Shown here piece after piece: positions 1 to 59,700 of a stretch of 64,000 nt of DNA. Position 1 is the stretch's first letter; each line of letters opens with the position of its first letter. This DNA is from Paraphysomonas bandaiensis. Taxonomy: Eukaryota > Protista > Chrysophyceae. The stretch is taken from positions 1 to 64,000 of the forward strand of contig CBFFRP010000044.1 in the NCBI GenBank assembly GCA_965644295.1, given 5' to 3'. The notes below the pieces were generated by a model. It saw only the letters and a program-made list of their open reading frames with translations. It was not told the origin of the DNA and did not search any database. A program made the position numbers and the translations under genes.

Positions 1-1202
1 TCGTCGATGTCTGGTCTGCCAGTGTGAAATTCGATGCGAGATATGAGGCCGAGGCCCGTACAGTCAGAATTGGTATATCGGATGCGCCCTTTCCATGTTT
101 CACTTATCACCGCGAGGGCGCCCCCCATGTGTGGGTCAGTGGGTCCGAGCTTCGGTTTCGTGTTAAGAAAGCGGCATACGAGAACCCCTGGGATCTGGTC
201 CTGTATATAGTCGTCTAGGTAGGCTGCTTGTCTTTGTGAGAGCCGTACGTCGAGGAGGTAAAGGCAATCTAGACTTTGAGAGCGAAAGTAGTGGAGTATG
301 GCCTCTATTTTTCCGGGGTTGCTGGAAGGGTTGCCATTGACGTTCCACGTTGAGAATTTGAAATGTGTGGCGTGTGTTAGTGGACTGCGCGAAGGTTCGG
401 GGAGGGTGAGGGTCTGCCGTGGTGGCGACTGCTTTTGGGAGAGTAAGGTGTGCCATTCCTGCTCTCGGAGCGCAATATCTTCGGCATACGCCGCTCTTGC
501 TTGGAGGAGGATCTCTGTCGACCACTTTTGGTCTTCCCAATACTGGTACCCGTAGTTGACGAGGAGTTCTTCGTGGGGGTTGATTTTGCGTAATGCTCGT
601 ATGTATATCCGTCCCGTTTTTGTGTAGAACTCTACGTTGGCGGCATTGGCCTGTAGCGGGTCGTTGATGTATCCGGCTGCGCAAAGTATGCGTTTGCTTT
701 TCCTGTCCCTGGCGTCTATTACGAATGTTCCTTGTGTGTCTTGGACGAGATAGTCGGAGGAACGCTCCGTGGACCGGGCTTCCAGGATAGAGAGTCTTTG
801 GCCAGTGCACTCGGAAATGATGGCATGGGCCGGGATCTGCTCTCCGGCGTATAAGGCATTTCCTTTGGGCAGGGTGTCTGCTAGGCCCATCAGGACTTTA
901 TATTTGAGTGTAGGGTCCCATGTGAGCGGTTGGGGTGGATTCGCTGCTTGGAGTAAGGTGCGGAAGGGCACGTGTGGACAGTATAATGTATGTGTAGGGA
1001 CTGTGTCAGGGAGGTCTGCATAGGACTGGGCGTGTCGGGCTTTACGAGGGGGCTGTGTCCTGGTGGGGAGTGTGGGGGTCCGGTTGCCTTTTGTCCGGGG
1101 AGTTTTCCGTGGCCTAGATGTAGAATTGTGGGGGAGGAGTTTATGGTGTCTGATGATGGAATGGTGTCGGCCACTGTGGTCTCTGAAGGCGCAGGAGGGC
1201 AT
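1..1202 (-). CDS. ORF-B (not in the ORF track, no stop in window): SET domain followed by the N-terminus of an APE endonuclease
   Basis: Manual translation: the frame is open from 1244 to the window edge, first ATG at 1202. SET-like segment at ~880..537: KGNALYAGEQIPAHAIISECTG...DYLVQ...FVIDARD...AAGYINDP...ANVEF...IYIRALRKINPHEELLVNYGYQYW. APE-like segment at 362..1: FKFSTWNVNG...KIEAILHYFRSQSLDCLYLLDVRL...MGGALAVISETW...DCTGLGLISRIEF. Confidence 0.85.
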   Translation of the reverse strand, partial: MPSCAFRDHSGRHHSIIRHHKLLPHNSTSRPRKTPRTKGNRTPTLPTRTQPPRKARHAQSYADLPDTVPTHTLYCPHVPFRTLLQAANPPQPLTWDPTLKYKVLMGLADTLPKGNALYAGEQIPAHAIISECTGQRLSILEARSTERSSDYLVQDTQGTFVIDARDRKSKRILCAAGYINDPLQANAANVEFYTKTGRIYIRALRKINPHEELLVNYGYQYWEDQKWSTEILLQARAAYAEDIALREQEWHTLLSQKQSPPRQTLTLPEPSRSPLTHATHFKFSTWNVNGNPSSNPGKIEAILHYFRSQSLDCLYLLDVRLSQRQAAYLDDYIQDQIPGVLVCRFLNTKPKLGPTDPHMGGALAVISETWKGRIRYTNSDCTGLGLISRIEFHTGRPDID

Positions 1203-4200
1203 GTGGGTGTGGCTACGGGGCTGGTGGGATGTTGTGGGCGTGCATTAATGGGCGGGACGTCGCGCTGAACGCTGGGTTCACGCACTTGAATGTGTGGTTC
1301 AAGGTTGAGTAGAGCGTTGTCAAGGTTGATGGCGAGGCCGGCAGGGTTGATGATGTAGAAGTGTGCGTTGTGCAGGACTATGTGAGGGAGATTCAGAAGT
1401 ATGGCTTCACGGAGTTCGTCTGACGTCCACGCAGGGCCGTACGCGTGGGGGTCGCTGGGTATGCCAACAATGCTGATTGATTCTCCATCAGTGGCCCATG
1501 TGGTTGTGGGGGTGAAGAATGTGGCGAGCCAGTGCATTTCGCGGACAGATAACCAGTGACGAATGTCGTCCGGGGTGGTGTATGTGTGTTGATGCCTGCT
1601 GGTCATGGCTGTGAGAGCATGTTGTAGCTTGACGATGGTGGTTTGGTCACAGCTAGGGTGGAGGAGCACGTCTCGAAGTAGGTTGCTGAGCCACTGTCCT
1701 GCGTAGGTCCTGTGCTCTGGTCGCCGGAAGTCGAGCTCCCAATAGGTGGCTGTAGGTCGTTTGCTGGTCATGAGCATGTGCAATCGATGGAGGGTTCCGT
1801 ATGCACAGTATCCGTTGGCTGGGATATCGTGTGCTGTGTGGATGTTCTGCGCGGATACATGAAGCCTGAATATTCTGCCAGCGTTCTGTATTGCTGTGCG
1901 GGGCGGTTGAGGCTGATCGGGATGTAGAGTTTGGGCTTCGATTTCCCTTAGTCCACGCGGAGTGATACTCAAGGTCACCATACCGTCGGTGATATAGAGA
2001 GGGGTAGGGGATGATGTGGTGCATGGGGGTGGTGGTGAGGTGTATATGTCGATACAGCTGGTGTTGTGGTCCTGTGCAGCTGCATACGCTGGTGTGTGTA
2101 GAGTGTCCATGTTGTTATGGGAGGGAGTGGTTGTGCCGTGGGGTTGGTATGATGTCGTGGTGTGTGATACTGGATGTGGACAAGTGAAGAGGTGGGATGA
2201 TGTTTGGGCGGACTGAAGAAGCTGCAACAGGGAGAGTCTAGCTGCACGAGAAGCATTGGTGCACTTACTGTCGACATCGGTAATCCTGAGGAGAAAGTAG
2301 TGAGATGCGCTATACGCGACGTTGTGGACTGGTGTAGGGGGGTGTCGAGTCGTTCCTGTCGACGTCTTGAGGAGGACCCAGCCACGCTGAAGGTACAGCG
2401 GGTGTCCCTGCCAGAACTGGAATCGGAGTCGTAGTAGTTTAAGCATGAGTAGGAAGTCTTCGGTGTCCATGTAGTGTTTGGCGGGGAGGGCTTTGGCCTG
2501 TGAGTTGGGGGAGCGGAGGGAATTCCTCATGCGGGTGAGTGTACGCCGCAGTGTTTGGATACGTGTGGCAGTGATGCCTGCAGTGAGGCATAGGGCCAGC
2601 AAGCGTTGCACCAGTGACAATAATGCGGTGGTATCCTCCTCGCTGGAAAGGTGCACAGGGTTGTATTTTCCTGGTGCAGTTGACCTCAGAATTTGATGAG
2701 CTGCTGCCACCGAGCAGAAGCCACGTCCGGGGGTGGCGGCGTAATCCGTATCGCAGTTGAACGAGGTGACGTGTATGTAGTTGGAACTGTCGTTGACAGT
2801 ATTGAAGAGTGTGGGCCAGGCTGTTGGGTCCGGAGAGGTCATGATGGTGGTGTGGAGTTGGTGTAGGAGATCCTCTCGCAGGGACGCTGCTATTTGGCCG
2901 GTGTTGTCGTAGGCAGCCCAGGTGTTGGTGAGTAAATTGGTGAAGGGGACTGTGCTGTCCTGTTGTGGGGGCTTAGCCTCCAGCTGGTTAACTTTGGCAG
3001 TCGTGGGGGAAGTGGGGCCAGTCGTGGTGGACAGAGGAGTGAAGGTATCTGTGGTGCCAGACCTGTTCGGTTTCAGGAGCTGGGGTGTGGGAGTGATACA
3101 GTGAGTTGAGGACAGAGTCGCTGAGCCGTGATTTTTGTGGGAGGTTTTGTCGCGTGCATGGGCTGTTACTGTGAGAGGTGGGTGGGAGACTGTGGATGGG
3201 TGGTGACCTGGTGGAGCGACTATAGTAGTGTGCGATGTTTCGGAGTGAGTGTGGTCTGTACCGCAGGTATTATGTTGTTCGGTGGTGTGTGATTGTTGAC
3301 GGGTGGGTATGGGGGGGAAGAAGTCGAAGAGGGTGGTTAGGGATGGTGCGGTCTGGTGGGAGGCATGGACACGTCGGCGTCGATGGGAGGGGGGCCTCCG
3401 TGCGGGGCCATCTCCGCTATCGTCAGAGGTATACCCTGGGCCCTGCTGGTGTGCCGAGGGGTGCTCTGTGCGCTGTGTGTTTGTATCATGTGGACCCCGG
3501 GAATGCTGTGCGTAGGTTCTGTGCGTCGAGCACCATGTGTAGTCTCGACTAAATGGCTCATGTAGCATGGAACACAACAGCAGCTTCAAGGTGATACAGG
3601 GGGAGTGTTTTGGATGTAGAGGTGGAGACAAAGGTGATAGTGTTTCGTAGGTTCTCTGCGGTGAGTGCGAAGTGTAGGCGAGACTACATAGCTCGGACCC
3701 CAGGGAACACAACAATGAGAGTGGGAGTGTAGCCTGGGGGTGTATGTATTGGGATATAGGGGAAGGACGGTTATGTCTCCTGGGGAGTTGTCCCGCGTTA
3801 TCTGGAGCTGCCATGGGAGTGGGAGCGTCGGCTTGGTGGGTATTACCTGGGGTTGTGGGCTGTCGAGATACCTTATTAGGGGGTTTACGTGGTCGACGCT
3901 TGGGCGGACCGTCGCTGCTGTCGTCACTGCTGTAACCAGGTCCAACCTGGCGTGGTCTGAGTTGGTGTTTTTTCGCACCTCTTTGCGTCGGAGGATTGTC
4001 GTGTGAAAGCTTGTGAGTACTATGGGCTGTGAACAGGCATACCTGGTGCATGCACAGCATTTCCACAGTCCGCTCTGTGCATCGCGTGAGAGCGTGAGTT
4101 GGAGGATGTGGGTGGTGGTGTGCTGTTGGACGGGCACAGGAGGGGAGGTGGGTGTTTTGATGCAGGTGAGCAGTACCATGGGCTGTGAACAGGCACACCT

Positions 4201-5677
4201 GGTGCATGCACAGCATTTCCACAGTCTGCTCTGTGCATCCTGTGAGAGCGTGAGTTGGAGGATGTAGGTGGTGGTGTGCTGTTGGACGGGCACGGGAGGG
4301 GAGGTGGATGTGGGTGTTTTGATGCAGGTGAACAGTACCATGGGCTGTGAACATGCACACCTGGTACATGCACAGCGTTTCTACAGTCCGCTCTGTGCAT
4401 CGCGTGAGAGCGCGAGTTGGCGTGTGCTGGTGGTGTTGTGCTAGTGCACGGACACAGGAGGGGAGGTGGATGTGGGTGTTTTGATGCAGGTGAGCAGTAC
4501 CATGGGCTGTGAACAGGCACACCTGGTGCATGCACAGCATTTCCACAGTCCGCTCTGTGCATCCTGTGAGAGCGTGAGTTGGAGAATGTAGGTGGTGGTG
4601 TGCTGTTGGACGGGCACGGGAGGGGAGGTGGATGTGGGTGTTTTTATGCAGGTGAACAGTACCATGGGCTGTGAACATGCACACCTGGTACATGCACAGC
4701 GTTTCTACAGTCCGCTCTGTGCATCGCGTGAGAGCGCGAGTTGGCGTGTGCTGGTGGTGTTGTGCTAGTGCACGGACACAGGAGGGGAGGTGGATGTGGG
4801 TGTTTTGATGCAGGTGAGCAGTACCATGGGCTGTGAACAGGCACACCTGGTGCATGCACAGCATTTCCACAGTCCGCTCTGTGCATCCTGTGAGAGCGTG
4901 AGTTGGAGAATGTAGGTGGTGGTGTGCTGTTGGACGGGCACGGGAGGGGAGGTGGATGTGGGTGTTTTTATGCAGGTGAACAGTACCATGGGCTGTGAAC
5001 ATGCACACCTGGTACATGCACAGCGTTTCTACAGTCCGCTCTGTGCATCGCGTGAGAGCGCGAGTTGGCGTGTGCTGGTGGTGTTGTGCTAGTGCACGGA
5101 CACAGGAGGGGAGGTGGATGTGGGTGTTTTGATGCAGGTGAGCAGTACCATGGGCTGTGAACAGGCACGCGAGGTGCATGCACAGCATCTCCACAGTCCG
5201 CTCTGGGCATCTCGTGAGCTGTATTATCTCATATGGTCTTTGCGTCGAGCACAATGTGTATACATGGCTACATGGCTCATATGGCGTTGAACACAACAGC
5301 GGGTTCGAAATGGGACGGTGTGTGTGTGTTGAGTGGAATAGAGTGGGCGGAGGTAACGGTGAAACGGGGGTTCTCTGCGGTCGGCACCATGTGTAGACTA
5401 GACTGTATCGCGACGAAAATAAGGCACGGACAGGTCGATATGGCTCAGGAATATTAAGGAGTTGTGTGTGTTTGTTGTTAATGTATGGGGTGTGATGTAA
5501 GGAGGTATAGTGGCATAGTGTAGGAGGGAGTAGATGCAGTGGGGGTGGAGTGTGTCGGTGTGTGATCTGGAGGGCGTATACATCAGAATACTGGAGTGGT
5601 AGGGAGGAGCGTATAAGGGCTGTAGTACTCTTCATGTGTAGAGGCGGGAGGCGGTGGATTGTGTGTACTCTGCACAA
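890..5677 (-). CDS. ORF-A: 1595-aa retroelement protein with 54-aa Cys/His repeats and two OTU-like cysteine protease domains
   Basis: ORF track. First domain at ~2750..2290: TPGRGFCSVAAAHQIL...HYMDTEDFLLML...AYSASHYFLL. Second at ~1840..1350: IPANGYCAYGTL...HWLSVREMHWLA...VLHNAHFYII. The true start codon is uncertain. Confidence 0.65.
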   Translation of the reverse strand: MCRVHTIHRLPPLHMKSTTALIRSSLPLQYSDVYALQITHRHTPPPLHLLPPTLCHYTSLHHTPYINNKHTQLLNIPEPYRPVRALFSSRYSLVYTWCRPQRTPVSPLPPPTLFHSTHTHRPISNPLLCSTPYEPCSHVYTLCSTQRPYEIIQLTRCPERTVEMLCMHLACLFTAHGTAHLHQNTHIHLPSCVRALAQHHQHTPTRALTRCTERTVETLCMYQVCMFTAHGTVHLHKNTHIHLPSRARPTAHHHLHSPTHALTGCTERTVEMLCMHQVCLFTAHGTAHLHQNTHIHLPSCVRALAQHHQHTPTRALTRCTERTVETLCMYQVCMFTAHGTVHLHKNTHIHLPSRARPTAHHHLHSPTHALTGCTERTVEMLCMHQVCLFTAHGTAHLHQNTHIHLPSCVRALAQHHQHTPTRALTRCTERTVETLCMYQVCMFTAHGTVHLHQNTHIHLPSRARPTAHHHLHPPTHALTGCTEQTVEMLCMHQVCLFTAHGTAHLHQNTHLPSCARPTAHHHPHPPTHALTRCTERTVEMLCMHQVCLFTAHSTHKLSHDNPPTQRGAKKHQLRPRQVGPGYSSDDSSDGPPKRRPRKPPNKVSRQPTTPGNTHQADAPTPMAAPDNAGQLPRRHNRPSPISQYIHPQATLPLSLLCSLGSELCSLAYTSHSPQRTYETLSPLSPPLHPKHSPCITLKLLLCSMLHEPFSRDYTWCSTHRTYAQHSRGPHDTNTQRTEHPSAHQQGPGYTSDDSGDGPARRPPSHRRRRVHASHQTAPSLTTLFDFFPPIPTRQQSHTTEQHNTCGTDHTHSETSHTTIVAPPGHHPSTVSHPPLTVTAHARDKTSHKNHGSATLSSTHCITPTPQLLKPNRSGTTDTFTPLSTTTGPTSPTTAKVNQLEAKPPQQDSTVPFTNLLTNTWAAYDNTGQIAASLREDLLHQLHTTIMTSPDPTAWPTLFNTVNDSSNYIHVTSFNCDTDYAATPGRGFCSVAAAHQILRSTAPGKYNPVHLSSEEDTTALLSLVQRLLALCLTAGITATRIQTLRRTLTRMRNSLRSPNSQAKALPAKHYMDTEDFLLMLKLLRLRFQFWQGHPLYLQRGWVLLKTSTGTTRHPPTPVHNVAYSASHYFLLRITDVDSKCTNASRAARLSLLQLLQSAQTSSHLFTCPHPVSHTTTSYQPHGTTTPSHNNMDTLHTPAYAAAQDHNTSCIDIYTSPPPPCTTSSPTPLYITDGMVTLSITPRGLREIEAQTLHPDQPQPPRTAIQNAGRIFRLHVSAQNIHTAHDIPANGYCAYGTLHRLHMLMTSKRPTATYWELDFRRPEHRTYAGQWLSNLLRDVLLHPSCDQTTIVKLQHALTAMTSRHQHTYTTPDDIRHWLSVREMHWLATFFTPTTTWATDGESISIVGIPSDPHAYGPAWTSDELREAILLNLPHIVLHNAHFYIINPAGLAINLDNALLNLEPHIQVREPSVQRDVPPINARPQHPTSPVATPTCPPAPSETTVADTIPSSDTINSSPTILHLGHGKLPGQKATGPPHSPPGHSPLVKPDTPSPMQTSLTQSLHIHYTVHTCPSAPYSKQRIHPNRSHGTLHSNIKS
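4014..5220. repeat. 162-bp tandem repeat (~7.5 units), mostly alternating A/B variants (324-bp higher-order repeat)
   Basis: The anchor tgcaggtga occurs at 4161, 4323, 4485, 4647, 4809, 4971 and 5133; units alternate gagcag/gaacag variants; the leftmost unit is 6 bp shorter; the reading frame is preserved. Confidence 0.95.
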
Positions 5678-6227
5678 TATACAGTGTAAGATACGGTGTA
5701 TTCCAGTGGTGTAGGTTGCGTGTGTATGACTGAGTATCGGTGGTGTGTGTGATGATGTTGGAGAGGGTGTGATGGAGGAGTGTAAAGTATGAAAACACCG
5801 TAGACGAGGTTTGTGATGGAGCTCTGGAGGGCTTCTTACTAGGGAGAAGGTAAATTCTGCACTTCACAAAGTTAAGCAATGAGGCCACAGAGAGACTGCT
5901 GGATTTCGATGTATTCTTCTGACCTCTGAGGCATATGCCCGATATGATGAAGCAAAAGCATATACAATATAGAGAGCTTATAGTATAAAATATCCCGATA
6001 GCTGGTTATTACACGTTAAATAGTAGAATAGTTAAGCACTGACTCATAATCGCCTATTGCTAATAATACGACATTCACTACTGCTACAGTAGTATTATTG
6101 GTACCTATGTTCGGAGACGACGCGGCAACATCTGTTAGGGCCACCTACCGCTGCGGATTAAATTATATTTTTATCGCAAATATACACAAAAAATCAAATA
6201 TATGAAATAATCTAATGAGTGCACACT

Positions 6228-8236: not shown

Positions 8237-10892
8237 ATGTATGAAAGTGAAGATCTTGAAATGATTCATCCTCATAATTCCCCATCAAATCCTAATGAAA
8301 CTACTTCATTAATCCCTCCAACCTCCTCTAATCCATCAAACACCACACATCCATCATATAAAGAGATATACCTCATATATATCTCATATATCATAATACT
8401 ATTATTAGGATGCGGTATGGGATATACTTACTATACATTTCATCAACATATCTCACATATAACACAACAATATCATATCTTACATCATCAGTTTATAGAT
8501 TATCAATATAACAATGAATTGCATATATTAGAATTAAAAGATCGTGAAAAACATTATCATAATCAATATGAATTATTAAAAAATTTTACTATTAATTATA
8601 GTAAAGAATTTAATGATCGTATATTTGTATTAGAAAATATGACAACTAATGCGGATGTGATTGATAAACTTCATATAACTGAAAAGAAAATACATAAAGA
8701 AATGGAAAATGAAAGATATCAACTAGAGAAAGATATGGCAGCTGTACGATTGAATGTAACTCAGCATATTGCCCTCTCGGATAGTCTTATAGATGGTAAA
8801 CTCTCTGATGTGGATAATCGTATACGTCGGTCAGAAGACAGGGTAAATCGATTGATTGCTCAGACGTATGAGAATGTGAGTTTGGCGGTAGCTTCTGCGG
8901 ATCGACACATTCAACGCATGCAGAGCAATGTTACTGCCCAAGTAGCCACCATGAGTGCATCAGTACAAGGGGCAGTGACCTCTGTGGGGGGTATGGTGGA
9001 TGCTGCCAAAGAGGACATATACCAGGAAGTGCAACTAGTTCATGATAGTATGGACCAATACATCGCGTTCACTAATAATCAGTTTGCCGCAGAGAATGAC
9101 TTCGTCAAATATCAGCTCGCAGGTACTATAATACTAGTCGTATCCATGTTGTTGACCTGCTCTTTCAGGAAGTTTCTCCCTTTTGGCGTGCCTTATTTGC
9201 CTCTGGCACGTCACATCTCATCTTCGACATTTCGATAATCCTGATGTGCAGCGACGTGTTCTAGCTATCTTATGGATGGTTCCCATATACAGTGTTACGA
9301 GCTGGCTAGCATTAGTCTTTCCATCATCTCAGCCTGCACTGGGAGCTTTCCGTGACTGTTACGAGGCCTATGTTGTCTATACCTTCATAGCATTTCTTAT
9401 TGCAATTCTAGCTCGTGGTAAAGGTAGGGGGGAGGTCATTAATCTACTAGCATCTCGAGTAAATCCTCAAAGGTCGAATTCCGTTTTGACTGAAAGTGAC
9501 AGGAATGGTCCAGGTTCAGAATTTGGAAGTGATTCCCCGGACTGCGGCGATGATTCTGAACGTAGTAGTCCAAAAAACAGCCACAAAATATCTGCCCCGT
9601 GCTCGTGCTGTATTCCCGCTCGCACTAAAAACCATCCCCGTGCGCTTGCTTCTTCTATACTTTACCAATGTCAAGTCATGGCAATGCAGTTCGTGCTTCT
9701 TAAACCACTTCTTGCCGCTGCTCCTTTCGTGTTCCGCTTATGTGGTGTGGACTACGATGATCTACAACCCATTTCGCATGGAAGCATAGTATGGGGAAGC
9801 CCAAGGCTGTACGTTATGGTGGTTGCCAATATCTCTGTCTGTGTTGCCTTTTATGGTCTTCTCAGTTTCTATCACATCACAGAGAGAGATCTTGCGTGGT
9901 GTGACCCGTGGCCGAAGTTTTTATGTGTCAAGGGCGTCGTATTCATGACTTTCTGGCAAGATATTCTGTTACAACTTATGAGTGGTTCAGGCTTAGTGGA
10001 CTCTAAAGCCGCTGCACAGATTCAAAACTTGCTAATATGCATTGAGATGTTTATGGCGAGTATTGCGCATTTCTATGTTTTTCCGCATTTCGAGTGGGCC
10101 AAAGGATATCGCAAGGAGGCCCTTACACGTACGCGCATACGCGACACGCTTGCGCTACCGGACTTCGTGACAGACGTGCGACTTATGACCTTTGGTAAGG
10201 GATGGGAGGTAGAGAGCAACGGATCAATAGACAGGTCATCTCCTATGCAGAAGGAGCGTAGTACAGGTAGCAGAGGAGAGGAAACTGCTTTAGTTGACAG
10301 AAGACGAAGTCGCAGTGGAGACATTTCTCCTGATGCAGAGAAACATAGTACTTGGAGGGAATATGGGAGCTGTCTGCAGATGCGGAGCCAGGATCAAAGT
10401 GACAGAGGGAGTGAAGGAAGTGGGGACATGGAAGGCCTGGCGACCAGTCTGTACACATACAGCACTATAGATCCCCCATCGTCAGATGACAACGAGCCCA
10501 GAGTGGGCAGCAGGAAAAGAGAACCTAGCTTTCGAAGGAGTGTGGGTGAATCGAAAGGATCACCAGAAAGAATGAGGTTTCAAGCAGAGCATGGAGGGAA
10601 GGAAGGGCATATCGAAAATGAACCGATGTGCTCTGTGGCAGCCGCTCTTGGGTCGTTGGACTTTTCGTGTACTGACAGCTCCCATGTCCCATTCAGCTCC
10701 AGTCTTCATGCTTCGGATAATGAAGACACAAAAGAGATGAAGGCTGACACAGCACCTGCACCTACTACAAGTTCTAACAGCAGTAATAAGTCAAACTCAC
10801 GTGCGACGAAGCGATCCCCTGATGTAATATTACATGGTAGTGATGAGGAGCTGTCGACTGATGAGGATGTTATAGTTGTTGCTTCAGTTTAG
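8237..10892 (+). CDS. TMEM184/organic solute transporter (OST-alpha) family protein with N-terminal TM + coiled-coil extension
   Basis: Intron 9123-9168 joins the two ORFs; motifs HLRHFDNPDVQRRVLAILWMVPIYS, RDCYEAYVVYTF, PWPKFLCVKGVVFMTFWQ, IQNLLICIEMF. Confidence 0.9.
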
Positions 10893-21618: not shown

Positions 21619-24293
21619 GATTCTTTAATATAATTGAATAATCCATATCTATATTACGCAGAGTGTTATGATGCTTTTTATTTACATACAGAAAGGGTAG
21701 CGAGACAGATAGGGTGGTCCATCTACCTTCTTTGGTTTGGAACAGATAGATTTCGACAGCAGCGTTTCAACAAGTTATTTTGTATAAATCATAAATAGTT
21801 AACATTAGGAAAGCTTTCCAGGCGTACAGGTACTGAAATAGAGTAGGCACAAGAACAGCACCAAGAGAAGGGTGATAGCCTTCTCTCCCCTGATTGATTT
21901 TTATATGTTTACATTTGAGAATATCCGAAGAGGAGGCTCAGAATCAGACTCCGACCAGTCTGAGTTAAACATGCTGTATGACTGCCCTATTAACATATAT
22001 GCCATACATGCATATTCTCAAATGTAAACACTTTTCCCGTGCTTCCGTTGCTTTGAACTCTTTATGCTTTAGATGAAACTTCTGGAGTGTCTTCGGAGAG
22101 CGCTTCACCGCCTCCCTGCAGTACGAATACGCGATGGCATATGACATTGGCCTTCAAGTAATCTTTCGTCGCTTGCTTGTATGACTTCGCCTCAAGCTTG
22201 TTCAGCGGTGGAAGTCCGAAGTCTTCCTCTCTTTGTGGCCTTTCGAGCGCGACCTCGCTTTCCTCTTTACGCATCAGAAACGTCTCGAAATCTTCAATCC
22301 ATTGATCAACATTGTTCTCGTCGAACCATGACAAATCAGCTCTATCCTCCTTCTCTCCTCCGCATCTGCTATCATATATATATAGTAAAGTCTAATTATT
22401 ACATGAGAACGGTTGTGTACAGAAACTAGTTATACATCTATAGACTAACTAATAACTGGACTTGCTATATACTACTAGCGGCGGGCAACCGTCTCGGGAC
22501 TGCTTGTGCATCGCTGCGAGCACCATGGTGCAACCGTCCCTTGTATTGAGCTTAGTCGGGGGGTCTACTTTTGGGCAATATGTCTGGCGGACCTGTGCCA
22601 TGGATTATGTGAGGGGTGAATGGGGCGAGATGTATATGAGAGATGAGAGTGTAAGTTGGTGGTGGGTATCGGTCTGCTATCATATTGACTATCGGTCATT
22701 TTAGCAGTTAAAATCATTAAGAAAATTTTATAGTAATTAAACTGGATAGACTCTTTATTATAATTGCATACACAATTATTATAATCATGTAAAACATGTC
22801 AACAACATGATAATTTATTTCGTTCATATCAACCACTGCTCAACTTCAGTATCTTGAATCGTCATGATACAATACTTCAGTTTCACAGTTATAGCTATAT
22901 AGTATATAGCATCTTTGTCTACGTATTACTGTTTTTCACATTGTATTAACGTATTCTACATTCTACAGTACTATCTTAGAGAACCATACGTATTCCAACA
23001 TTATATACGTCTAACATGCCACTGTTTGGGTCCTATTATTTGTCGGTTATTATCGAATTAGTATCAGGCTATGCATACCGTTACGCTTTATACGTGAAAA
23101 TTCTAAATGGATATATGGGCATTATTATAAACAGAGTAAAATACAGAATAGGCTTCTATATTAAGCGATGGAATATAAGGAACATATACAATAGAGTGTG
23201 AAGCTAAGTATACTTGATGTTGATATCAACACAAGTAGACACGCAACATCAAAGGCAACGTAGAGCACATGGACTAATATATCTCATGCATAAGTTATCA
23301 TGCATGAATGTGGCTATATATCAACATATCAACTGGTTGTATTTCTCTGTCTTTTATAGAACTAATGTGTGATATTAATAAGGTAGCAACGGCTCCATAG
23401 GCCCATATGCAACACTTTATATAATATACGGTATGTGTGTGTTATATATACTATTCGCCCCATGCAACTTTATATCTGCGCCTCTTCAGTTATAGTTTCA
23501 TATCATCTATTCAACTAACAACATATAAATATCCAAAGATAGAGATATATATGGTACACACGGGTATATGGTAGGATATGAGATATGAGTGATTGCACAC
23601 ACTGCTATATGGAGTATGCACAATATACACACCATATATATGTAGATAGAAACATCTATATAACATGCTCACGTATCATTGCAAACAATATCTTAAATAA
23701 CATCCATACCTCTCAAAATACATGCAATACATATTATACAACACCAATAAAACATATACTGTAGTATTCATTGCATAATATATATATAACTCGACCTTAA
23801 AGTTCTATAGTATCACTGTAGTGGTCATGCATGTAACTGTAAGTCAATGGCTGCCATATGTTTGAAGCAATGGTTTGTCTTCGTGTTGATGACTATTGGC
23901 TGCAACTACGATTCATATAGTTCGAAAGCATGATAGAAACAGACAATGTAAATCATTAGTATGCATTAGATGAGATGGAAGCCACTTTACTTAAATGAAT
24001 GCATGCATGCATGTTTTCTATGCAACGATCTGTTCCATATATATCATAAAGTGGGTGTTTTCACTACAAAACCCCCCAAAAACGCTTTTTGCTACAATAC
24101 TTGTGCTTCTTTAAATAGGAATTTCGTAGAATATACCTTATTAATTCCTGTTTTCCATGCTTTTCGCATTATAACCTTCGAATACTACTACAAAACCCAT
24201 GAAATTGATGAAAATCAAGGATATTGTACTCTATATTTACAATATTTACAGTATATATACTCGACTTGGAGGTCGCAGTGTTGTGGTTAATAT

Positions 24294-41996: not shown

Positions 41997-43211
41997 TCAT
42001 ATACTCTCTCCAAGCAAAAGTGTTACTTCCGTTGTAACAGAAGCGACCAATGTCAGGGATCCATTATTCTTAATATGCCCATCGTTAAAGATAGTCGCAG
42101 TTTCAATGAAGTTTGGGAATCCCCAGTCGATTTTACCGGGACGAAACACCAGTGACTGCTTCGTTCCACGTTTGACAGATGGAAAAAGCGGGTTCTTCTT
42201 GCATAACGCAATAGTAAAATCCACTCGCAAATCTCTTTCTATATCAGGAAAGTAAATCCGTGCCTCATGGAAGTCATTTCCCCGTGGAGTTGGTCTGAAT
42301 TCGAGGAAAAACTCCCTTCCTTCGACAGACTGTCTATGAGAGCGATAAATTTTTTCCGGCGAAAACCCTGGGATAGTAAAGACTAGCTCAGTTGTAGCAC
42401 ACTTACTCTGGAGCTGCTGGATAGTACGCTGCTGCGAGGTGATCATTCTCTGTTGGGAAAGTATAGTAGACATCATCATCGGAATATGTGCTTTTAAGTC
42501 ACTATTGTGTGACGCCAGGTCCTTACGCTTCACCATTGCTTCGCATCCCAGGATAGATAGCTCACATTTAACAGTTTCTTCTGGGCAAGTAGTAGATCGG
42601 TGATTGTCCACCATGTTTCGAGGAATCCTTGTGGCATCCCCACTCGTGGTATGGCATCCATTAGGGCAGGGAATTACAGTTTTGGGACATACTTCTTGAT
42701 GACCAGAAATCAGATAGTGCTTCATGGATTGCTCACAAAATCCACATGTAACCACGCGGTGTTTGCACGAAATACCATGTTTTCGTGCATCTGATCGTGG
42801 AAAGATATCTTCACAACCCTCATTACAACACATGACTTGTACAAATGGACATGATTCCATATGACTTTTTAAATCTAACATCTTTCCATTCCATTGACAT
42901 TTCTTACCTTTTATATCATCTAATATAGATGGGCACTTTAATATAAAATCATTAATTAAATCAGCCACCACTCTATTCGTTATTAAATGACTGTTATATA
43001 ATTCACTTGTGGAACATTTCATAGGACATTCTTTCCGTAATTTTAAAGAATTTTCAATACATTTTCTACAAAATGAATGACCTTTAGGACATTGTACAGG
43101 ATCTTGCATAACATCAAAACATATTGTACAATGAAAATGTTCATTAGGTGGGGTGATATATAAAGTATTTGGTATACCTCTTGATGTATAATGTAAAGCA
43201 AGTGGATACAT
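41997..43211 (-). CDS. TRAF-like protein (RING + TRAF zinc fingers + coiled coil + MATH)
   Basis: CTICFDVMQDPVQCPKGHSFCRKCI...CP RING; repeated HxxxC..V.C zinc fingers; C-terminal DWGFPNFI MATH motif. Confidence 0.92.
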   Translation of the reverse strand: MYPLALHYTSRGIPNTLYITPPNEHFHCTICFDVMQDPVQCPKGHSFCRKCIENSLKLRKECPMKCSTSELYNSHLITNRVVADLINDFILKCPSILDDIKGKKCQWNGKMLDLKSHMESCPFVQVMCCNEGCEDIFPRSDARKHGISCKHRVVTCGFCEQSMKHYLISGHQEVCPKTVIPCPNGCHTTSGDATRIPRNMVDNHRSTTCPEETVKCELSILGCEAMVKRKDLASHNSDLKAHIPMMMSTILSQQRMITSQQRTIQQLQSKCATTELVFTIPGFSPEKIYRSHRQSVEGREFFLEFRPTPRGNDFHEARIYFPDIERDLRVDFTIALCKKNPLFPSVKRGTKQSLVFRPGKIDWGFPNFIETATIFNDGHIKNNGSLTLVASVTTEVTLLLGESI

Positions 43212-49693: not shown

Positions 49694-50725
49694 CTACATT
49701 ACTACGCATGAAAACATTTTACAGTACACTGGTTCAGAAGACAACGACCTGTCATTGCTCACTGAAGTGACACTAGCGGCTCGGCTCGTCTGTCTACTTG
49801 ACCGTGCCGAAGATAAGTACCTTTCTTCTATTAGCCCTCCGTTGCAGCCCAAGTCGCTAAGCAATAACGTGCTCCGATTATGGGTCGACTCCTCTGCCTC
49901 GTGCGAAATAAGCTGCTCCATAAAACTTCTATTGGGGTGAATTTCTGGTCTCCTGGCAATGACATATTTATACGCTTGCCGAAGGGTCCAACCAAAATGC
50001 TCTTGAACGAAAGCTATGACCAACGATGCGGAACGAGAGATTCCAGCCTGACAATGTACTAGGACTCGTCCGTTCTCCCCGAAGGCATGCTCGATAAAGT
50101 CATTTACTGGACGGAAAAAGTGGGACACATCTTCTGATTCGTCGTCTGTAATTTCTACGTTAAAATAACGAATCTTATCAGAAAATCTGTTGTCCTTCGA
50201 CTTTACTGCTGCCACTATGTGAGTAATTCCAAGACTGTCCAATAGAACATCATCACGTGCTTGCTGAATATTACCCAACCATAAAAAATTTTCAACAATT
50301 TCTGACGGGTAACGAAATTTTTTGAGATCAGAATCAGGGTTTGAGGTAAAGACCAGAGGATATCGTATCTTAAAATGAGGAATACTTACAAATTGAGGAC
50401 GAAATGGAAGATTTTCTTGAATTAATACAGAATATACAAACTGTATCCATGAATCTTCATATGTATTACCAGCTATAACTAAATGTAGATGTGATATCCA
50501 TGAAAATCTTTCACGTTGATGTTCTATAATACAATTATCAGATATCCATTGTATAGATGATATCCATGTCTTTGTATGTGGTGGTGAACATGTTATAGAT
50601 TCTCTTATACAATTATTATAATATTCTTCATGATTTCTACAATCAATGACTATATAATCACCATATGGTAGCATGTTACATAATAATGTATAGTTTATAT
50701 GAGGGATATGATAAGGAGATGACAT
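49694..50725 (-). CDS. Dual-specificity (MAPK-type) phosphatase with N-terminal rhodanese-like domain
   Basis: IVIDCR..EEY...CIRES; PSEIVENFLWLG; VLVHCQAGISRSAS; RRPEIHPNRSFMEQL. Confidence 0.92.
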   Translation of the reverse strand: MSSPYHIPHINYTLLCNMLPYGDYIVIDCRNHEEYYNNCIRESITCSPPHTKTWISSIQWISDNCIIEHQRERFSWISHLHLVIAGNTYEDSWIQFVYSVLIQENLPFRPQFVSIPHFKIRYPLVFTSNPDSDLKKFRYPSEIVENFLWLGNIQQARDDVLLDSLGITHIVAAVKSKDNRFSDKIRYFNVEITDDESEDVSHFFRPVNDFIEHAFGENGRVLVHCQAGISRSASLVIAFVQEHFGWTLRQAYKYVIARRPEIHPNRSFMEQLISHEAEESTHNRSTLLLSDLGCNGGLIEERYLSSARSSRQTSRAASVTSVSNDRSLSSEPVYCKMFSCVVM

Positions 50726-51068: not shown

Positions 51069-51139
51069 TACGGCAGCGGGGAATCGAACCCCGGGCAGAA
51101 GAATGGGAACCTTCTATGTTACCACTACACCACTGCCGT
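51069..51139 (-). tRNA. tRNA-Gly (CCC)
   Basis: ACGGCAG-TGGTGTAGTGGTAACATA-GAAGG TTCCCAT TCTTC-TGCC-CGGGG TTCGATT CCCCG-CTGCCGT-A cloverleaf, with downstream T-tracts. Confidence 0.95.
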
Positions 51140-56736: not shown

Positions 56737-59700
56737 TCAATTTTTCCCATTGGCGCTCAGATTCGGTATTATAATATTTGGAAATTTTTTCGTCACAACA
56801 AGAAACTCTTTCAGCGTGATTGCATTGCTGTCATTCGCCACAGCCTGCTTCATCATAGTTTGGGCTTTTCTTTCAATACTAGCTAAACTGACCATATGAT
56901 TTCCTCGAAGAATCTGTCGAACTTCATTTAAAGATATATAGCCCGTCTTATCTTCATCGAACATATGAAAAGTTAAGGGCAATCGAACATCTCTCGAAAG
57001 TTCAACAAAATTGAAGCACCCGAGCAAAAATTCCCTGAAATCCACTTTTCCAGAACGTTCGGGATCAAAGAGCCCAAACAGTCTGTTATTCTCGTTAATA
57101 GGATCAATGCGAAGAAGATTGCAAAACTGATTGAACGTAACGTTTCCATTCGCCCGCTGTTCTCTAGGTAAATCCAAGTATGAGTTGTACCCCATTTTTA
57201 AAGAGTCAAAATCATATTCGTGGTCATGCAGGAAGTTCGTAATCATTTTCTTCTTCATATCGCGTGCCTGCATTTCCTTCTGTCTCTGGTACGTTGCAGA
57301 GTCTACTTCATTCGCTCGACCAGCCATTACTAATTTTTCATCTTCAATTTCCTTCAGTTTGGCCTCATTAGCTTCACCATCCTTGTCCATAATCGCGGGG
57401 TTGGGATGCAAAACGAGTTTTCTAAATTCATCAAAACTAACTTGGCCATCTCCATCAATATCGACCATCGCAATCATCATATCGATTTCTTCGTCAGTAA
57501 TAAGCTCACCCATGCATATAAGAATGTGGCGAATCTCCGATGCACCGATAAAATTATTTTTATCTAAATCAATAAATCTAAACGCATTTTCGATCTCTTC
57601 GTCTGTGAACTCTTGCTTCATCATGTCAGATTTTTGCCCTTCTTTTAAAATATCTGCCACCATAGCATTGTCATCTTCTCTAACTTGCAAGTCATCCTTT
57701 TCGTCTGGAGGTGCTTGTCTGAGAGCATCATCAAAACTCTCCATACCCGGGCGGTACTGAGGAAAGGCTATAGCTGGAGGGCCTTCAAAGTGAAATTGCA
57801 AGTTAATATCCCCACATTCACGGACTCCGCCTGTGGGTTTGTTTTGTTTCAGTGTCACCCAGAGATTCTGTATTCCTGCCTTGAATACTGTTAAAAGTGA
57901 GACTTGAGCGCTCCCTATCAACTCATCATCTCCTTGTATGTTCTGGTGGTAGCAGTCCACATCCATGAGGTACTGGTCCACAATATCGAAATCAAGCTTC
58001 GCAGACCAGACAGGATCCATCCCGCCGTCCTTGTCGACAGGGCACTTTTTCGACATTTTAGCTGCCTGACTATTGAGTGTAAAGTTTACAAACGGGTCCA
58101 GACGAAGTGTTTCGCCTTCAGTTGGAGCATTCTTACCAACAGGTAGGAGTCCTTTGCCTCGAACTACATTCATATGCAATGTTCCAGCAGGGAGGTGTGT
58201 TACCTGTCAAAATCACACGTTATCCATATACTCACATTTGTGAAAGAGGTACCTTCATAACTAGCTGACCCTGTGCCGTCTCATCATCGCGAAGCTTATC
58301 AGGCTTATAAAATAAGTCAAAGGTGTCCCTCTTTGCAGCCATCGGTAATATATCCATGTAAGGCAATAGGCATAGATCGGTGTAAGCAATGGGATTGTCT
58401 TCCCCAATTTCATGGTCACAAATCAATATATCTAAATCATTCACCCATGATTCAGTATCAACCCACATAATAATATCCTCCTCTGCAAAATACGGATCTC
58501 TACCGCCCTTCTCGATCACCTTACTCTTCTTTTTGTATGATCCCAATGCCATCTGTACGTATGGATGCTGTTGACCCATGGGGTCTACATTTCTAAGTCT
58601 CTTTGCCTCGTACAGAGTAAACACAAACATTCCGGCCCTCGCCTCTTCAAATAAGAATTCTAACATAATCTAAAACCGCAAATTAAAGGCATCAACATGG
58701 AGCATTTAATAATGAAAACATGGATACGTACTTTGCTTGTACTCGTTCTGTCACCAGGGGCTACAATAGGAATCTTTTCGTTGTATGCCTTGAATGGATT
58801 TTTGAAAAATCGAACCACACTCATTGTCACTGTTCCGATTACTTCATCCTTAAATGATCCTTTATTCCACACTTCTATGCTCAATTGAAGATCCTCCTGA
58901 AATATGTACTGTGAGGGCCGAACAACATCGAAATAAACCAATTCATCGGCAAAGCTCGCATCTGTGTCTTGTTTCCGTTGTACTTGTGTTTCTTTCCACG
59001 GCCACTTATCGGCAGCCCCCAGTTTGAATCTAATATATGGATCTACCCGTGGGTTTTTCGATTTATCATCCCTCTTCCTCAGGCCAATGCCTTGAATACA
59101 AGTAATATTGAGTCTTCCTCCATTTATTTCTCTCGCAAGAGTACTCTCAAGCCCCTCTTTATTAAGGGGAACAGGTGGTACGAATTCTCCAACGCCCTGT
59201 GCCTGAGCGACTGCGGCATTAGGGTCTTTGATTACTTCGACACCAGGGGGTGCAGTGATCAGCTGGCTAACAACAGATCCGCTGATGTCAGACTGCATGT
59301 CATCTGGGATGGTGCGTTGGCCAGCAGAGCTAACAGTAGGAGGTCGTTTGCTTGGCTCACTAGTAGTGGAGCTCGAAGTGGGGCGAGACGGGAGAGGTTG
59401 TGGCTTGTCCGCAGAAGGCTGGGTTTGCATCGGCTGTGGCTTGTCCGCAGAAGGCTGGGTTTGCATCGGCTGTGGCTTGTCCGCAGAAGGCTGGGTTTGT
59501 ATCGGCTGTGGCTTGGCCGCAGGAGACTGGGTTTGCATCGACTGTGGCTTGGCCGCAGGAGGCTGGGACAGCATCTGTGTCTGAGGGTCAGAATCAACCG
59601 GTGCAGAGTGCGGCTCGATATCTTGCGCTGAAGGAGCCGGAGTCTTCACGTCTTGCTGAACAACAGGAACGACTGATGGCGGCCCCTCAGGAGGCTGCCC

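What the first reader, a model, noticed from the sequence alone, without database searches (positions are those of the whole stretch)
1..5900. Non-LTR retrotransposon carrying a chromatin-modifying toolkit: 2x OTU-like protease + SET methyltransferase fused ahead of the APE endonuclease
Seen in the sequence: the domain order on the minus strand is Cys/His repeats, OTU-like, OTU-like, frame change, SET, APE (TWNVNG...), running off the window. Established knowledge: APE is the N-terminal domain of LINE ORF2, and cysteine-protease accessory domains occur in a few non-LTR lineages. A SET lysine methyltransferase in the same frame about 60 aa before APE is not a standard LINE architecture that I know of. 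Inference: the element may write methyl marks and remove ubiquitin at its own insertion site or on host silencing factors (self-encoded anti-silencing or target-site remodelling).
Basis: partly seen in the sequence, partly recalled or inferred. Interest (0 to 1): 0.92.

Follow-up and report, generated by a model that had tools for sequence, protein, structure and literature searches.

The report
LINE retrotransposon carrying a SET methyltransferase
The left end of the window is a large, recently active jumping gene (a LINE) from an unidentified marine eukaryote, and its single giant protein carries a histone-methyltransferase-type SET domain fused just ahead of its DNA-nicking and reverse-transcriptase domains, a layout shared by a family of related elements and not found in the papers I could search.

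Summary
On the minus strand of window 1-5890 lies the 5' 5.9 kb of a C/A-rich element (GC 0.55 against a 0.35-0.40 host). It has in-frame 162-nt tandem repeats, two paralogous Cys...His domains, a frame change, a Pfam-significant SET domain, and 64 residues later the start of an APE endonuclease.

Five near-identical copies (98.7-99.7%) in marine metagenome contigs supply the missing half: complete APE, an RT with AYADD, an RNase H-like stretch and a CCHC knuckle. They show that the frame change is a private 1-nt deletion in a C-run. The intact element is about 10.8 kb with one ORF of about 3,470 codons.

Two 5'-truncated copies and a 295-bp 3' fragment inside the window, flanked by a 13-bp target-site duplication, show target-primed reverse transcription.

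SET placed directly before APE recurs in at least 10 protein clusters sharing only 22-36% identity with the window family. One 12-kb relative is colinear over its whole length. The fusion is therefore a lineage trait, not a chance capture.

The "OTU" label is not proven. Only the catalytic motifs resemble OTU; the Pfam, PDB-profile and fold searches all failed.

What the SET domain does, and whether the Cys/His domains are proteases at all, are inferences. I call it a new variant of a known kind, of moderately high interest.

The parts
5636..5890 (-). 5' end and 5' untranslated region of the full-length copy. The exact first base is not determinable because no second full-length copy was found.
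   Evidence: Composition switches from host-like (C 0.17) to element-like (C 0.38, G 0.12) at about 5890. The first in-frame ATG is at 5635.
890..5635 (-). ORF-A, the N-terminal part of the element's single giant ORF. In this copy it ends early because of the frameshift at ~1134.
   Evidence: The stop at 890-892 is reached only because of the 1-nt deletion.
4016..5218 (-). Tandem array of 162-nt (54-aa) units, 7.5 copies, in frame.
   Evidence: TRF gives period 162 (88% matches) and 324 (96%). The same array lies at the 5' ends of contigs L014 and L016.
2861..4015 (-). Low-complexity Pro/Thr/His/Ser-rich linker. It holds two GPGY(S/T)SDDS...RR(R/P) basic patches that look like nuclear localisation signals.
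   Evidence: Translation. No family hit.
2225..2860 (-). Cys/His domain 1, a putative papain-fold and possibly OTU-like cysteine protease. The Cys of PGRGFC is at 2716-2714 and the His of SASHYF at 2302-2300.
   Evidence: Homologous to P0173 aa 337-569 of the distant relative L013. The Cys and His motifs are conserved. The AF2 model is of low confidence.
1301..1924 (-). Cys/His domain 2, a paralogue of domain 1. The Cys of PANGYC is at 1807-1805 and the His of NAHFYI at 1363-1361.
1129..1139 (-). Frameshift site: a C-run of 5 where copy L001 has 6. It separates ORF-A from the SET-APE frame in this copy only.
   Evidence: Pairwise alignment with L001. L001, L014, L015 and L017 are all open through this point.
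549..866 (-). SET domain. It has a G-x-A SAM-pocket loop (KGNALYAG; the family consensus AGxGAFA is the standard GxG), AAGYINDP (N-D in place of the usual N-H) and EELLVNYGYQYW with an invariant Tyr.
   Evidence: Pfam PF00856 E=3.4e-10. The family profile hits KMT2C at 3e-10, EZH2 at 4e-9 and SETD7 at 3e-8 in the PDB.
357..548 (-). Conserved post-SET linker that joins SET to APE. The family consensus is YW..RWSLSLLR.AA..Y...W.DL...PLKHPW.
   Evidence: Alignments A1 and A2. W, L and W columns are invariant beyond the Pfam SET boundary.
1..356 (-). N-terminal ~118 aa of the APE endonuclease (WNVNG, LLDVR), cut by the window end.
   Evidence: The complete domain in copy P0001 aa 1079-1327 gives PF03372 E=3.4e-9, with GDFN and RIDH present.
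22378..22672 (-). Second, heavily 5'-truncated copy: the last 295 bp of the element, ending in a (TA)n tail.
   Evidence: 92.6% identity over 256 bp to the 3' end of copy L015.
22673..22685 (-). Target-site duplication, upstream copy (ATATGATAGCAGA).
   Evidence: Exact 13-bp repeat on both sides of the fragment.
22365..22377 (-). Target-site duplication, downstream copy (ATATGATAGCAGA).

Best explanation
Window 1-5890 (minus strand) is the 5' 5.9 kb of a full-length copy of an autonomous APE-type non-LTR (LINE) retrotransposon. The element is about 10.8 kb and belongs to an unidentified marine eukaryote.

Shown:
- The intact element encodes one ORF of about 3,470 codons. Its order is N-terminal 54-aa repeats, a low-complexity linker, Cys/His domain, Cys/His domain, SET, a conserved linker, APE, RT, an RNase H-like region and a CCHC knuckle. 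A short AT-rich 3' UTR ends in (TA)n.
- It moves by target-primed reverse transcription. Copies are 5'-truncated at different points, and one fragment has a 13-bp target-site duplication.
- The window copy is dead, or mis-assembled, through a 1-nt deletion in a C-run.
- SET fused directly to the N-terminus of APE is an inherited trait of a whole LINE lineage.

Inferred:
- The SET domain is probably an active lysine methyltransferase. It keeps the SAM-pocket glycines and the catalytic Tyr, but has N-D/E where canonical SETs have N-H.
- Because it is built into the endonuclease module, it most likely acts on nucleosomes or chromatin proteins at the site that APE nicks. That could make the target permissive, or mark the new copy against silencing.
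- The two Cys/His domains are most likely papain-fold cysteine proteases with an OTU-like active-site loop. Their first job would be to cut the 3,470-aa polyprotein into working pieces. Deubiquitinase activity is a possible second job.
For: LINE identity:
- APE PF03372 E=3.4e-9 and SET PF00856 lie in one 1774-aa ORF of copy L001.
- RVT_1 E=7.5e-16 with AYADD lies directly downstream.
- An RT profile of the lineage hits R2 proteins at 1e-30 and human L1 ORF2p at 7e-20 in the PDB.
- Copy L001 is 5'-truncated with its own AT-rich flank, and copy L015 is 5'-truncated at a different point.
- The window holds a 295-bp 3' fragment with a 13-bp TSD and a (TA)n tail.

Single ORF:
- Each of the six copies is broken at different places.
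- Every break is spanned by an open frame in another copy.

Recent activity and constraint:
- Copies are 98.7-99.7% identical.
- Variants shared between copies are 8 synonymous to 2 non-synonymous. The binomial p is about 1e-3 against an assumed neutral non-synonymous fraction of 0.72.

Lineage trait:
- The HMMER search of 1.84 billion proteins gave 160 hits.
- Among the fetched proteins, SET followed by APE occurs in 10 clusters at 22-36% identity to the window family.
- SET-APE-RT is seen in the full-length proteins P0163 and P0124.
- L013 is colinear over Cys/His domain (28%), SET-APE (32%) and RT plus C-terminus (37%).

SET integrity:
- Y, G, Y and W of the ...YG.EYW motif are invariant.
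- The N of the IND motif is nearly invariant.

Cys/His domains:
- The G-x-C motif is invariant and the N-x-H-[YF] motif is conserved across paralogues and L013.
- hhalign places the Cys loop on the Pfam-certified OTU Cys loop of P0008, the relative with the best RT match.
- The AF2 model puts the Cys at the N-end of a helix and the His at the start of a strand.
Against: - No enzymatic evidence exists for any domain.
- The His of the canonical SET N-H-S/C SAM-binding motif is replaced by Asp or Glu throughout the family. The domain could therefore be inactive or have altered cofactor binding.
- The closest solved SETs are H3K4, H3K27 and non-histone enzymes at similar E-values. Substrate and mark cannot be predicted.
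- The OTU assignment fails every statistical test. Pfam found nothing and the PDB profile search found nothing. hhalign gave a probability of 0.8%. The AF2 model has pLDDT 38-48. Foldseek found nothing below E=0.037.
- The RNase H-like region is recognised by eye only and has no profile hit.
- All six observed copies carry at least one frame break, so an intact master copy has not been seen.
- The host is unidentified.
- The LINE clade is unassigned.
Confidence: 0.6

Rival explanations
1. The SET domain is catalytically inert. It serves as a histone-tail or protein-binding tether that steers the APE-RT machine to a particular chromatin state, in the way chromodomains steer chromoviral integrases. 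It would not write a mark.
For: The His of the N-H SAM-binding motif is replaced by Asp or Glu in all family members. SET is physically welded to APE by a conserved linker, which fits a targeting role. Grau-Bove et al. report that most TE-chromatin fusions involve reader domains (10.1101/2021.11.30.470311).
Against: The catalytic Tyr and the GxG loop are conserved over 22-36% identity. That is more than a pure binding module would need. In known SET structures the His of N-H contacts SAM largely through its backbone (own knowledge), so losing it need not kill activity.
Confidence: 0.2
2. The two Cys/His domains are not proteases or deubiquitinases. They would be structural or nucleic-acid-binding modules, an ORF1-like function, and the Cys and His are conserved for another reason such as metal binding.
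For: No profile or fold method recognises them. No acidic third catalytic residue follows the His: HYFLL and HFYII where OTU has H-x-D/N. The two domains share only ~18% identity.
Against: The active-site-like loop P-G-x-G-x-C...H-Q-[IL] matches the OTU loop of a related LINE. The Cys-to-His spacing is 138-148 aa. The predicted Cys-on-helix and His-on-strand geometry fits. Bona fide OTU and Ulp1 domains sit with the same SET type in relatives P0008 and P0090.
Confidence: 0.3
3. The element is a Helentron-type rolling-circle DNA transposon. These also combine an APE endonuclease with OTU protease genes and, in Phytophthora proto-Helentrons, a SET gene. On this reading it is not a retrotransposon.
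For: PMC4067079 documents APE, OTU and SET in Helentrons and proto-Helentrons of a stramenopile.
Against: An RT with AYADD follows the APE in the same strand and ORF. No Rep or helicase domain is found anywhere in the ~10.8 kb. 5' truncations, a 13-bp TSD and a simple-repeat tail are marks of TPRT. In Helentrons APE is C-terminal to the helicase, whereas here it is N-terminal to the RT.
Confidence: 0.01
4. The arrangement is a chance chimera. Either a LINE landed next to, or transduced, a host SET gene in this one copy, or the assembly joined unrelated pieces.
For: The window copy shows a frame change between the upstream part and SET-APE.
Against: The same junctions occur in five other copies from independent assemblies and at different genomic sites. 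The frame change is a 1-nt homopolymer deletion. The strand composition is uniform across the whole element. Relatives at 22-36% identity have the same SET-APE junction, with conserved linker residues.
Confidence: 0.02

Closest known systems
APE-type non-LTR retrotransposons with RNase H and a C-terminal CCHC knuckle. [quoted passage not shown]
   Same: The order APE, RT (YxDD), RNase H-like, CCHC. Also TPRT hallmarks: 5' truncation, TSD and a simple-repeat tail.
   Different: It has one ORF of about 3,470 codons with a ~1,950-aa N-terminal extension. That extension holds tandem 54-aa repeats, two Cys/His domains and a SET domain. No ORF1 is recognisable. The RT profile scores higher against R2 proteins than against L1 ORF2p in the PDB. 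Clade not assigned, because no reference RT set was available.
LINEs with accessory cysteine proteases: NeSL and Utopia with an N-terminal Ulp1-like protease (PMC4640811), and Dualen/RandI with a cysteine protease (own memory of Kojima & Fujiwara 2005, not checked here).
   Same: A cysteine-protease-like module in the LINE polyprotein, N-terminal to the enzymatic core.
   Different: The domains here are duplicated. They match neither the Ulp1 nor the OTU Pfam models, and they are combined with SET. NeSL and Utopia use a restriction-like endonuclease, not APE.
SET genes carried by DNA transposons of oomycetes: proto-Helentron-Pi (PMC4067079), and HarbingerS and MuDR families (Repbase Reports cited in PMC12730594).
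   Same: A mobile element carrying a SET lysine methyltransferase, sometimes together with OTU protease genes.
   Different: Those are DNA transposons in which SET is a separate small ORF. Here SET is a domain inside a retrotransposon polyprotein, fused to the endonuclease by a conserved linker.
P0008 / L004, an environmental 3,923-aa single-ORF LINE found here.
   Same: It gives the best RT match to the window family among the fetched proteins (E=9e-40). It has the same SET subtype (E=1e-18). It carries a Pfam-certified OTU (E=6.7e-18) and an Ulp1 (C48) protease.
   Different: The domain order is RNase H, APE, RT, SET, OTU, Ulp1, so the accessory block lies after the RT instead of before APE.
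Retrotransposons that captured other epigenetic writers or readers. Examples are DNA cytosine methyltransferases in DIRS and Gypsy elements, and chromodomains in chromoviruses (both cited in 10.1101/2021.11.30.470311).
   Same: The concept of a retroelement encoding chromatin machinery.
   Different: The enzyme is different (a SET lysine methyltransferase) and so is the element class (LINE).

Membership tests
Non-LTR (LINE) retrotransposon, APE type | AP-endonuclease-like (Exo_endo_phos) domain N-terminal to the RT in the same ORF | tested here: met
   PF03372 E=3.4e-9 at P0001 aa 1079-1327. RT motifs start at the end of the same ORF. The window holds the first ~118 aa.
Non-LTR (LINE) retrotransposon, APE type | LINE-type reverse transcriptase with a YxDD box | tested here: met
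   RVT_1 E=7.5e-16 and AYADD in L001:5905-7149. The lineage RT profile hits R2 at 1e-30 and L1 ORF2p at 7e-20. This was seen in near-identical copies, not in the window itself.
Non-LTR (LINE) retrotransposon, APE type | Insertions with variable 5' truncation, target-site duplication and a simple 3' tail, and no terminal repeats | tested here: met
   5' truncations in L001 and L015. The 295-bp fragment at window 22378-22672 has a 13-bp TSD and a (TA)n tail. The 3' end of the main window copy lies outside the window.
Named LINE clade (L1, I, Tad1, Dualen/RandI, Proto1 and others) | Position in an RT phylogeny with reference sequences | not testable with these tools
   No reference RT set such as Repbase or RTclass1 was available. 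The only evidence is coarse PDB profile scores. No restriction-like endonuclease motif was seen by eye after the CCHC.
SET-domain lysine methyltransferase | Match to the SET profile above the curated threshold | tested here: met
   PF00856 at 40.7 bits against a cut-off of 22.4. The family profile hits KMT2C at 3e-10.
SET-domain lysine methyltransferase | SAM-pocket GxG loop and the catalytic Tyr of the C-terminal EL..Y motif | tested here: met
   AG.GAFA in the family and KGNALYAG in the window. The Tyr of EELL..YG is invariant in 10 of 10 aligned sequences.
SET-domain lysine methyltransferase | N-H-(S/C) SAM-binding motif | tested here: not met
   The motif reads I-N-D-P in the window and I-N-[DE] across the family. 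The Asn is kept and the His is replaced.
SET-domain lysine methyltransferase | Methyl transfer to a lysine substrate | not testable with these tools
   Needs a biochemical assay.
OTU cysteine protease / deubiquitinase | Significant match to the OTU profile (PF02338) or to a solved OTU | tested here: not met
   No Pfam hit at E<=10 on either isolated domain. No PDB hit with a single sequence or a 4-sequence profile. hhalign against the Pfam-OTU of P0008 gave a probability of 0.8%.
OTU cysteine protease / deubiquitinase | Catalytic Cys loop (D-G-x-C-x-[FY]) and C-terminal His motif (H-[YF]) about 100-150 aa apart | tested here: inconclusive
   PGRGFC and PANGYC pair with SASHYF and NAHFYI, 138-148 aa apart, and are conserved in L013, P0135 and P0053. 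The Asp before the Cys loop and an acidic residue after the His are not in the canonical places.
OTU cysteine protease / deubiquitinase | Papain-like OTU fold | tested here: inconclusive
   AF2 gave pLDDT 38 from a single sequence and 48 from a 4-sequence alignment (pTM 0.49). Foldseek against the PDB gave a best E of 0.037 to an unrelated protein. Otubain-1 was at rank 40 with TM 0.25.
Helentron / Helitron | Rep/helicase protein with a C-terminal APE | tested here: not met
   No Rep or helicase domain in any ORF of the element. APE is followed by an RT.

The most novel reading that the evidence does not exclude
A whole lineage of marine-eukaryote LINEs has welded an active histone lysine methyltransferase to its integration endonuclease, with cysteine protease/deubiquitinase domains alongside. 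On this reading the retrotransposition complex rewrites the chromatin of its own target site at the moment of insertion. That could be a self-encoded anti-silencing device or an integration-licensing device, and it has no described counterpart among retrotransposons.
Probability: 0.3. Interest if true: 0.85.

Novelty: new variant of a known kind. Interest (0 to 1): 0.62.

Why it matters
LINEs are usually treated as targets of host histone methylation, not as carriers of a methyltransferase. A conserved SET-APE fusion would mean that a retrotransposon lineage brings its own chromatin writer to the nick site. That would open a testable route to how mobile elements choose or condition integration sites, or escape silencing.

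It also extends the list of epigenetic enzymes captured by mobile elements from DNA transposons and LTR/DIRS elements to LINEs. It shows that SET travels with cysteine proteases (OTU, Ulp1, or the unassigned Cys/His domain) in several element types.

On the practical side, one copy is deposited in a bacterial MAG. It marks eukaryotic contamination there.

Tried and rejected
Searches that found no more relatives:
- The word-index protein search with the OTU-like region, both inside the full ORF and as a separate 541-aa query, found nothing but the near-identical copy.
- The same search with SET-APE-RT found one relative, P0167.
- The metagenome DNA scan first failed because the alignment was too divergent. 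With a tighter alignment it returned only eight short, mostly generic SET loci, which I did not use further.

Tests of the Cys/His domains that gave nothing usable:
- AF2 on Cys/His domain 2 without an alignment gave pLDDT 38 and was unusable.
- AF2 on domain 1 with four sequences gave pLDDT 48.
- Foldseek on the domain-1 model gave no significant match.

Tests of the RNase H-like stretch that gave nothing:
- Pfam, NCBIfam and the PDB found no match.
- BLASTP against the Pfam RNase H of P0008 found nothing.
- The assignment therefore rests on the by-eye motif series DGS...E...D...H...D.

Host identification failed. Seven host ORFs are not in the protein collection as exact sequences. No tool here names organisms for non-identical hits.

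One literature query ('HarbingerS') was wasted on the English word.

The Helentron and chance-chimera readings were rejected for the reasons given under rival explanations.

Per-domain dN/dS among the copies was not informative. There are only 32 single-nucleotide codon variants in 5.3 kb.

Full report
THE OBSERVATION

The first 5.9 kb of the window differ sharply from the rest. GC is 0.53-0.56 against 0.34-0.44, and the + strand GC skew is +0.29 to +0.40, so the minus strand is C- and A-rich and G-poor. The switch lies at about 5890.

On the minus strand a 1595-aa ORF runs 5677..890, with its first ATG at 5635. From the composition, stops are expected at about 3% of codons, so an ORF of this length is not chance.

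A second frame, window:3-1244:-, is open for 414 codons and runs off the window. In it Pfam finds a SET domain (PF00856, E=3.4e-10, 40.7 bits against a cut-off of 22.4) at window 549-863. Sixty-four residues later comes FSTWNVNG, a typical start of a LINE AP-endonuclease.

The 'Cys/His repeats' are a 162-nt tandem array, 7.5 copies, at 4016-5218.

The two 'OTU-like' regions are real paralogous domains, each with a G-x-C motif and a later H-[YF] motif.

THE MISSING HALF

- The protein search found a 1774-aa protein (P0001) on an 8.8-kb marine metagenome contig (L001). It is 99.4% identical in DNA to window 3707..1.
- Its 90% cluster holds five copies on contigs from different assemblies. Two come from the Tara Oceans protist-fraction project PRJEB4352. 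One was deposited as part of a 'Nitrospiraceae' MAG.
- All copies align to the window copy, or to each other, at 98.7-99.7%.
- In L001 the Cys/His domains, SET and a complete APE (PF03372, E=3.4e-9) lie in one unbroken ORF.
- The window's frame change is a single missing C in a C-run at ~1134. The other copies read through that point. It is a private lesion or an assembly error, not part of the design.
- Downstream of APE lies an RT (RVT_1, E=7.5e-16) with FDSI and AYADD motifs.
- After the RT comes a stretch with the RNase H motif series (TDGS, YETLA, WTDC, RSHPE, IADAAA). This was recognised by eye only.
- A C-x2-C-x9-H-x4-C knuckle follows, and the stop is at L015 6797-6799.
- Each copy has one or more frame breaks, but at different places. 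Every break is spanned by an open frame in another copy. The ancestral element therefore had a single ORF of about 3,470 codons in about 10.8 kb.
- For coordinate mapping only, I concatenated natural pieces (window, L001, L015) in a scratch file.

EVIDENCE OF TRANSPOSITION

- L001 starts with 408 bp of AT-rich unrelated DNA and joins the element 2.2 kb inside it.
- L015 joins 4.1 kb inside, after its own flank. These are classic 5' truncations.
- The 3' end seen in L015 matches window 22642..22387 at 92.6%.
- That piece is a 295-bp terminal fragment at 22378-22672 on the minus strand. It ends in ...ACTATATAT and is flanked by an exact 13-bp duplication, ATATGATAGCAGA.
- In L015 the young truncated copy sits directly after the (TA)-ending tail of an older copy, 84% identical. 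This suggests insertion into TA-rich sites, including the tails of earlier copies.
- Among the six copies, variants shared by two or more copies are 8 synonymous to 2 non-synonymous, and singletons are 9 to 13. Against an assumed neutral non-synonymous fraction of 0.72, the shared class has p of about 1e-3. This fits purifying selection on the lineage that kept transposing, with neutral decay after insertion. The numbers are too small to say anything per domain.

CAPTURE OR LINEAGE TRAIT

- A full HMMER search of 1.84 billion representative proteins with the 414-aa SET-APE piece gave 160 hits at E<=1e-3.
- Most hits are plain SET proteins. Among the proteins fetched, 21 of 167 carry both SET and APE.
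- SET lies directly N-terminal to APE in 10 separate 50%-identity clusters, at 22-36% identity to the window family.
- In the alignment, conservation runs beyond the Pfam SET boundary through a linker (YW..RWSLSLLR, W.DL, PLKHPW) into the first APE motif (FK.GSWN..GNP).
- Full-length members show SET-APE-RT in one protein. These are P0163 (2097 aa) and P0124 (2317 aa).
- The 12-kb contig L013 is colinear with the window family over Cys/His domain (28%), SET-APE (32%) and RT plus C-terminus (37%).
- The relative with the best RT match, P0008, is a 3,923-aa ORF seen on several 12-16 kb contigs. It has the same SET subtype placed after the RT, followed by a Pfam-certified OTU and an Ulp1 protease.
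- So SET plus cysteine protease modules recur as accessories of this LINE lineage, in more than one arrangement.

THE SET DOMAIN

- A family profile hits KMT2C (3e-10), EZH2 (4e-9), SETD7 (3e-8) and EHMT2 (2e-6) in the PDB. The domain is clearly SET but cannot be assigned to a substrate class.
- The GxG loop and the Tyr of EELL..YG are conserved. The Tyr is invariant in the ten aligned sequences.
- The usual N-H pair reads N-D or N-E in all members.
- There is no Cys-rich post-SET. A conserved aromatic helix-like segment follows instead.
- I take the domain to be probably active, but an inactive binding role cannot be excluded.

THE CYS/HIS DOMAINS

- Pfam, NCBIfam, PDB sequence searches and a PDB profile search find nothing.
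- The domain is nevertheless a real conserved family. Domain 1 hits L013/P0173 (E about 2e-12 in the local set), and a four-sequence HMM also finds P0135 and P0053, both next to SET domains.
- G-x-C is invariant. N-x-H-[YF] is conserved wherever the C-terminal part is present.
- hhalign aligns TPGRGFCSVAAAHQIL with the OTU loop VPGDGNCLFHAVTHQL of P0008, but without statistical support (probability 0.8%).
- AF2 gave low-confidence models (pLDDT 38 and 48). In the better one the Cys caps a helix and the His opens a strand, as in papain-fold enzymes.
- Foldseek found nothing significant.
- Verdict: a putative papain-fold cysteine protease, possibly a divergent OTU. Membership is not shown.

MECHANISM

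Shown: an APE-type LINE that moves by target-primed reverse transcription and has been active recently.

Inferred:
- The SET module, built into the endonuclease, acts on chromatin at the nick site, either to license integration or to mark the new copy.
- The Cys/His domains cut the very long polyprotein and may also remove ubiquitin-like modifiers.
- The N-terminal repeats and basic patches may provide nucleic-acid binding and nuclear import in place of an ORF1.
- The main rival for SET is a non-catalytic tether.
- The main rival for the Cys/His domains is a non-protease role.
- Helentron and chimera readings are excluded by the RT, the TSD and the conserved junction.

COMPARISON WITH WHAT IS KNOWN

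- Ulp1-type proteases are known in NeSL and Utopia LINEs (PMC4640811).
- SET genes are known in DNA transposons of oomycetes (PMC4067079; PMC12730594).
- A survey of 172 genomes lists SET among the chromatin domains found fused to TE domains, without describing this architecture (10.1101/2021.11.30.470311).
- Five full-text searches found no paper describing a SET-encoding non-LTR element. Repbase Reports and Dfam could not be searched, so prior cataloguing cannot be excluded.
- I classify it as a new variant of a known kind.

LIMITS

- The host is unidentified. The flanking genes are ordinary eukaryotic ones: a TRAF-like RING protein, OSTalpha, a C2/EF-hand protein and a dual-specificity phosphatase.
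- The contig is not human, and nothing was withheld on that ground.
- The element is a cellular retrotransposon, not a virus, toxin or effector.

Noticed in passing
window 22365-22685: A second copy of the same LINE family: a 295-bp 3'-terminal fragment on the minus strand, 92.6% identical to the young copies. It is flanked by an exact 13-bp target-site duplication, ATATGATAGCAGA. It gives the element's 3' terminus, ...ACTATATAT.
   Followed up: yes
L016 (NCBI GCA_002726235.1, PBSN01000010.1): A 7.3-kb contig deposited in a 'Nitrospiraceae bacterium' MAG is 99.3% identical to this eukaryotic LINE. Its protein MBQ27685.1 is the SET part. This points to eukaryotic contamination or mis-binning in that MAG. 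Its last 160 bp do not match the element, so it is either a deleted copy or a chimeric contig.
   Followed up: partly
L015 1-215: A young 5'-truncated copy sits head-to-tail directly after the (TA)-ending 3' end of an older copy, 84% identical. This hints at a preference for TA-rich targets such as the tails of earlier insertions.
   Followed up: partly
L004 1454-13225 (protein P0008): A 3,923-aa single-ORF LINE seen on several 12-16 kb marine contigs. Its order is RNase H, APE, RT, SET, OTU (Pfam E=6.7e-18) and Ulp1/C48 (E=2.4e-18). The accessory block is the same as in the window family but lies on the other side of the RT.
   Followed up: partly
window 4016-5218: The 162-nt tandem repeats are open in all three minus-strand frames. 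They lie near the 5' end and recall the promoter monomers of mouse L1. Whether they are translated, act as a promoter, or both is open.
   Followed up: no
window 2883 (L001 1233-1247): A 15-nt in-frame indel between copies. It duplicates REDPL in L001 relative to the window, just upstream of Cys/His domain 1.
   Followed up: no
P0069, P0090, P0135, P0053 (environmental proteins): The same SET subtype occurs fused to other partners. P0069 has a protein kinase and three SET stretches. P0090 has an Ulp1 protease. In P0135 the unassigned Cys/His domain lies downstream of SET, and in P0053 it lies upstream.
   Followed up: partly
window 51069-51139: tRNA-Gly (CCC) gene on the minus strand. It is the only Rfam or ARAGORN hit in the window.
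   Followed up: no
window 41997-43211, 9183-10892, 56737-60738, 49694-50725: Host genes appear as long uninterrupted ORFs. They are a TRAF-like RING/zf-TRAF/MATH protein, an OSTalpha-type transporter, C2 plus EF-hand proteins and a dual-specificity phosphatase. The locus is a compact, AT-rich eukaryotic one with few or short introns. The host could not be named.
   Followed up: partly
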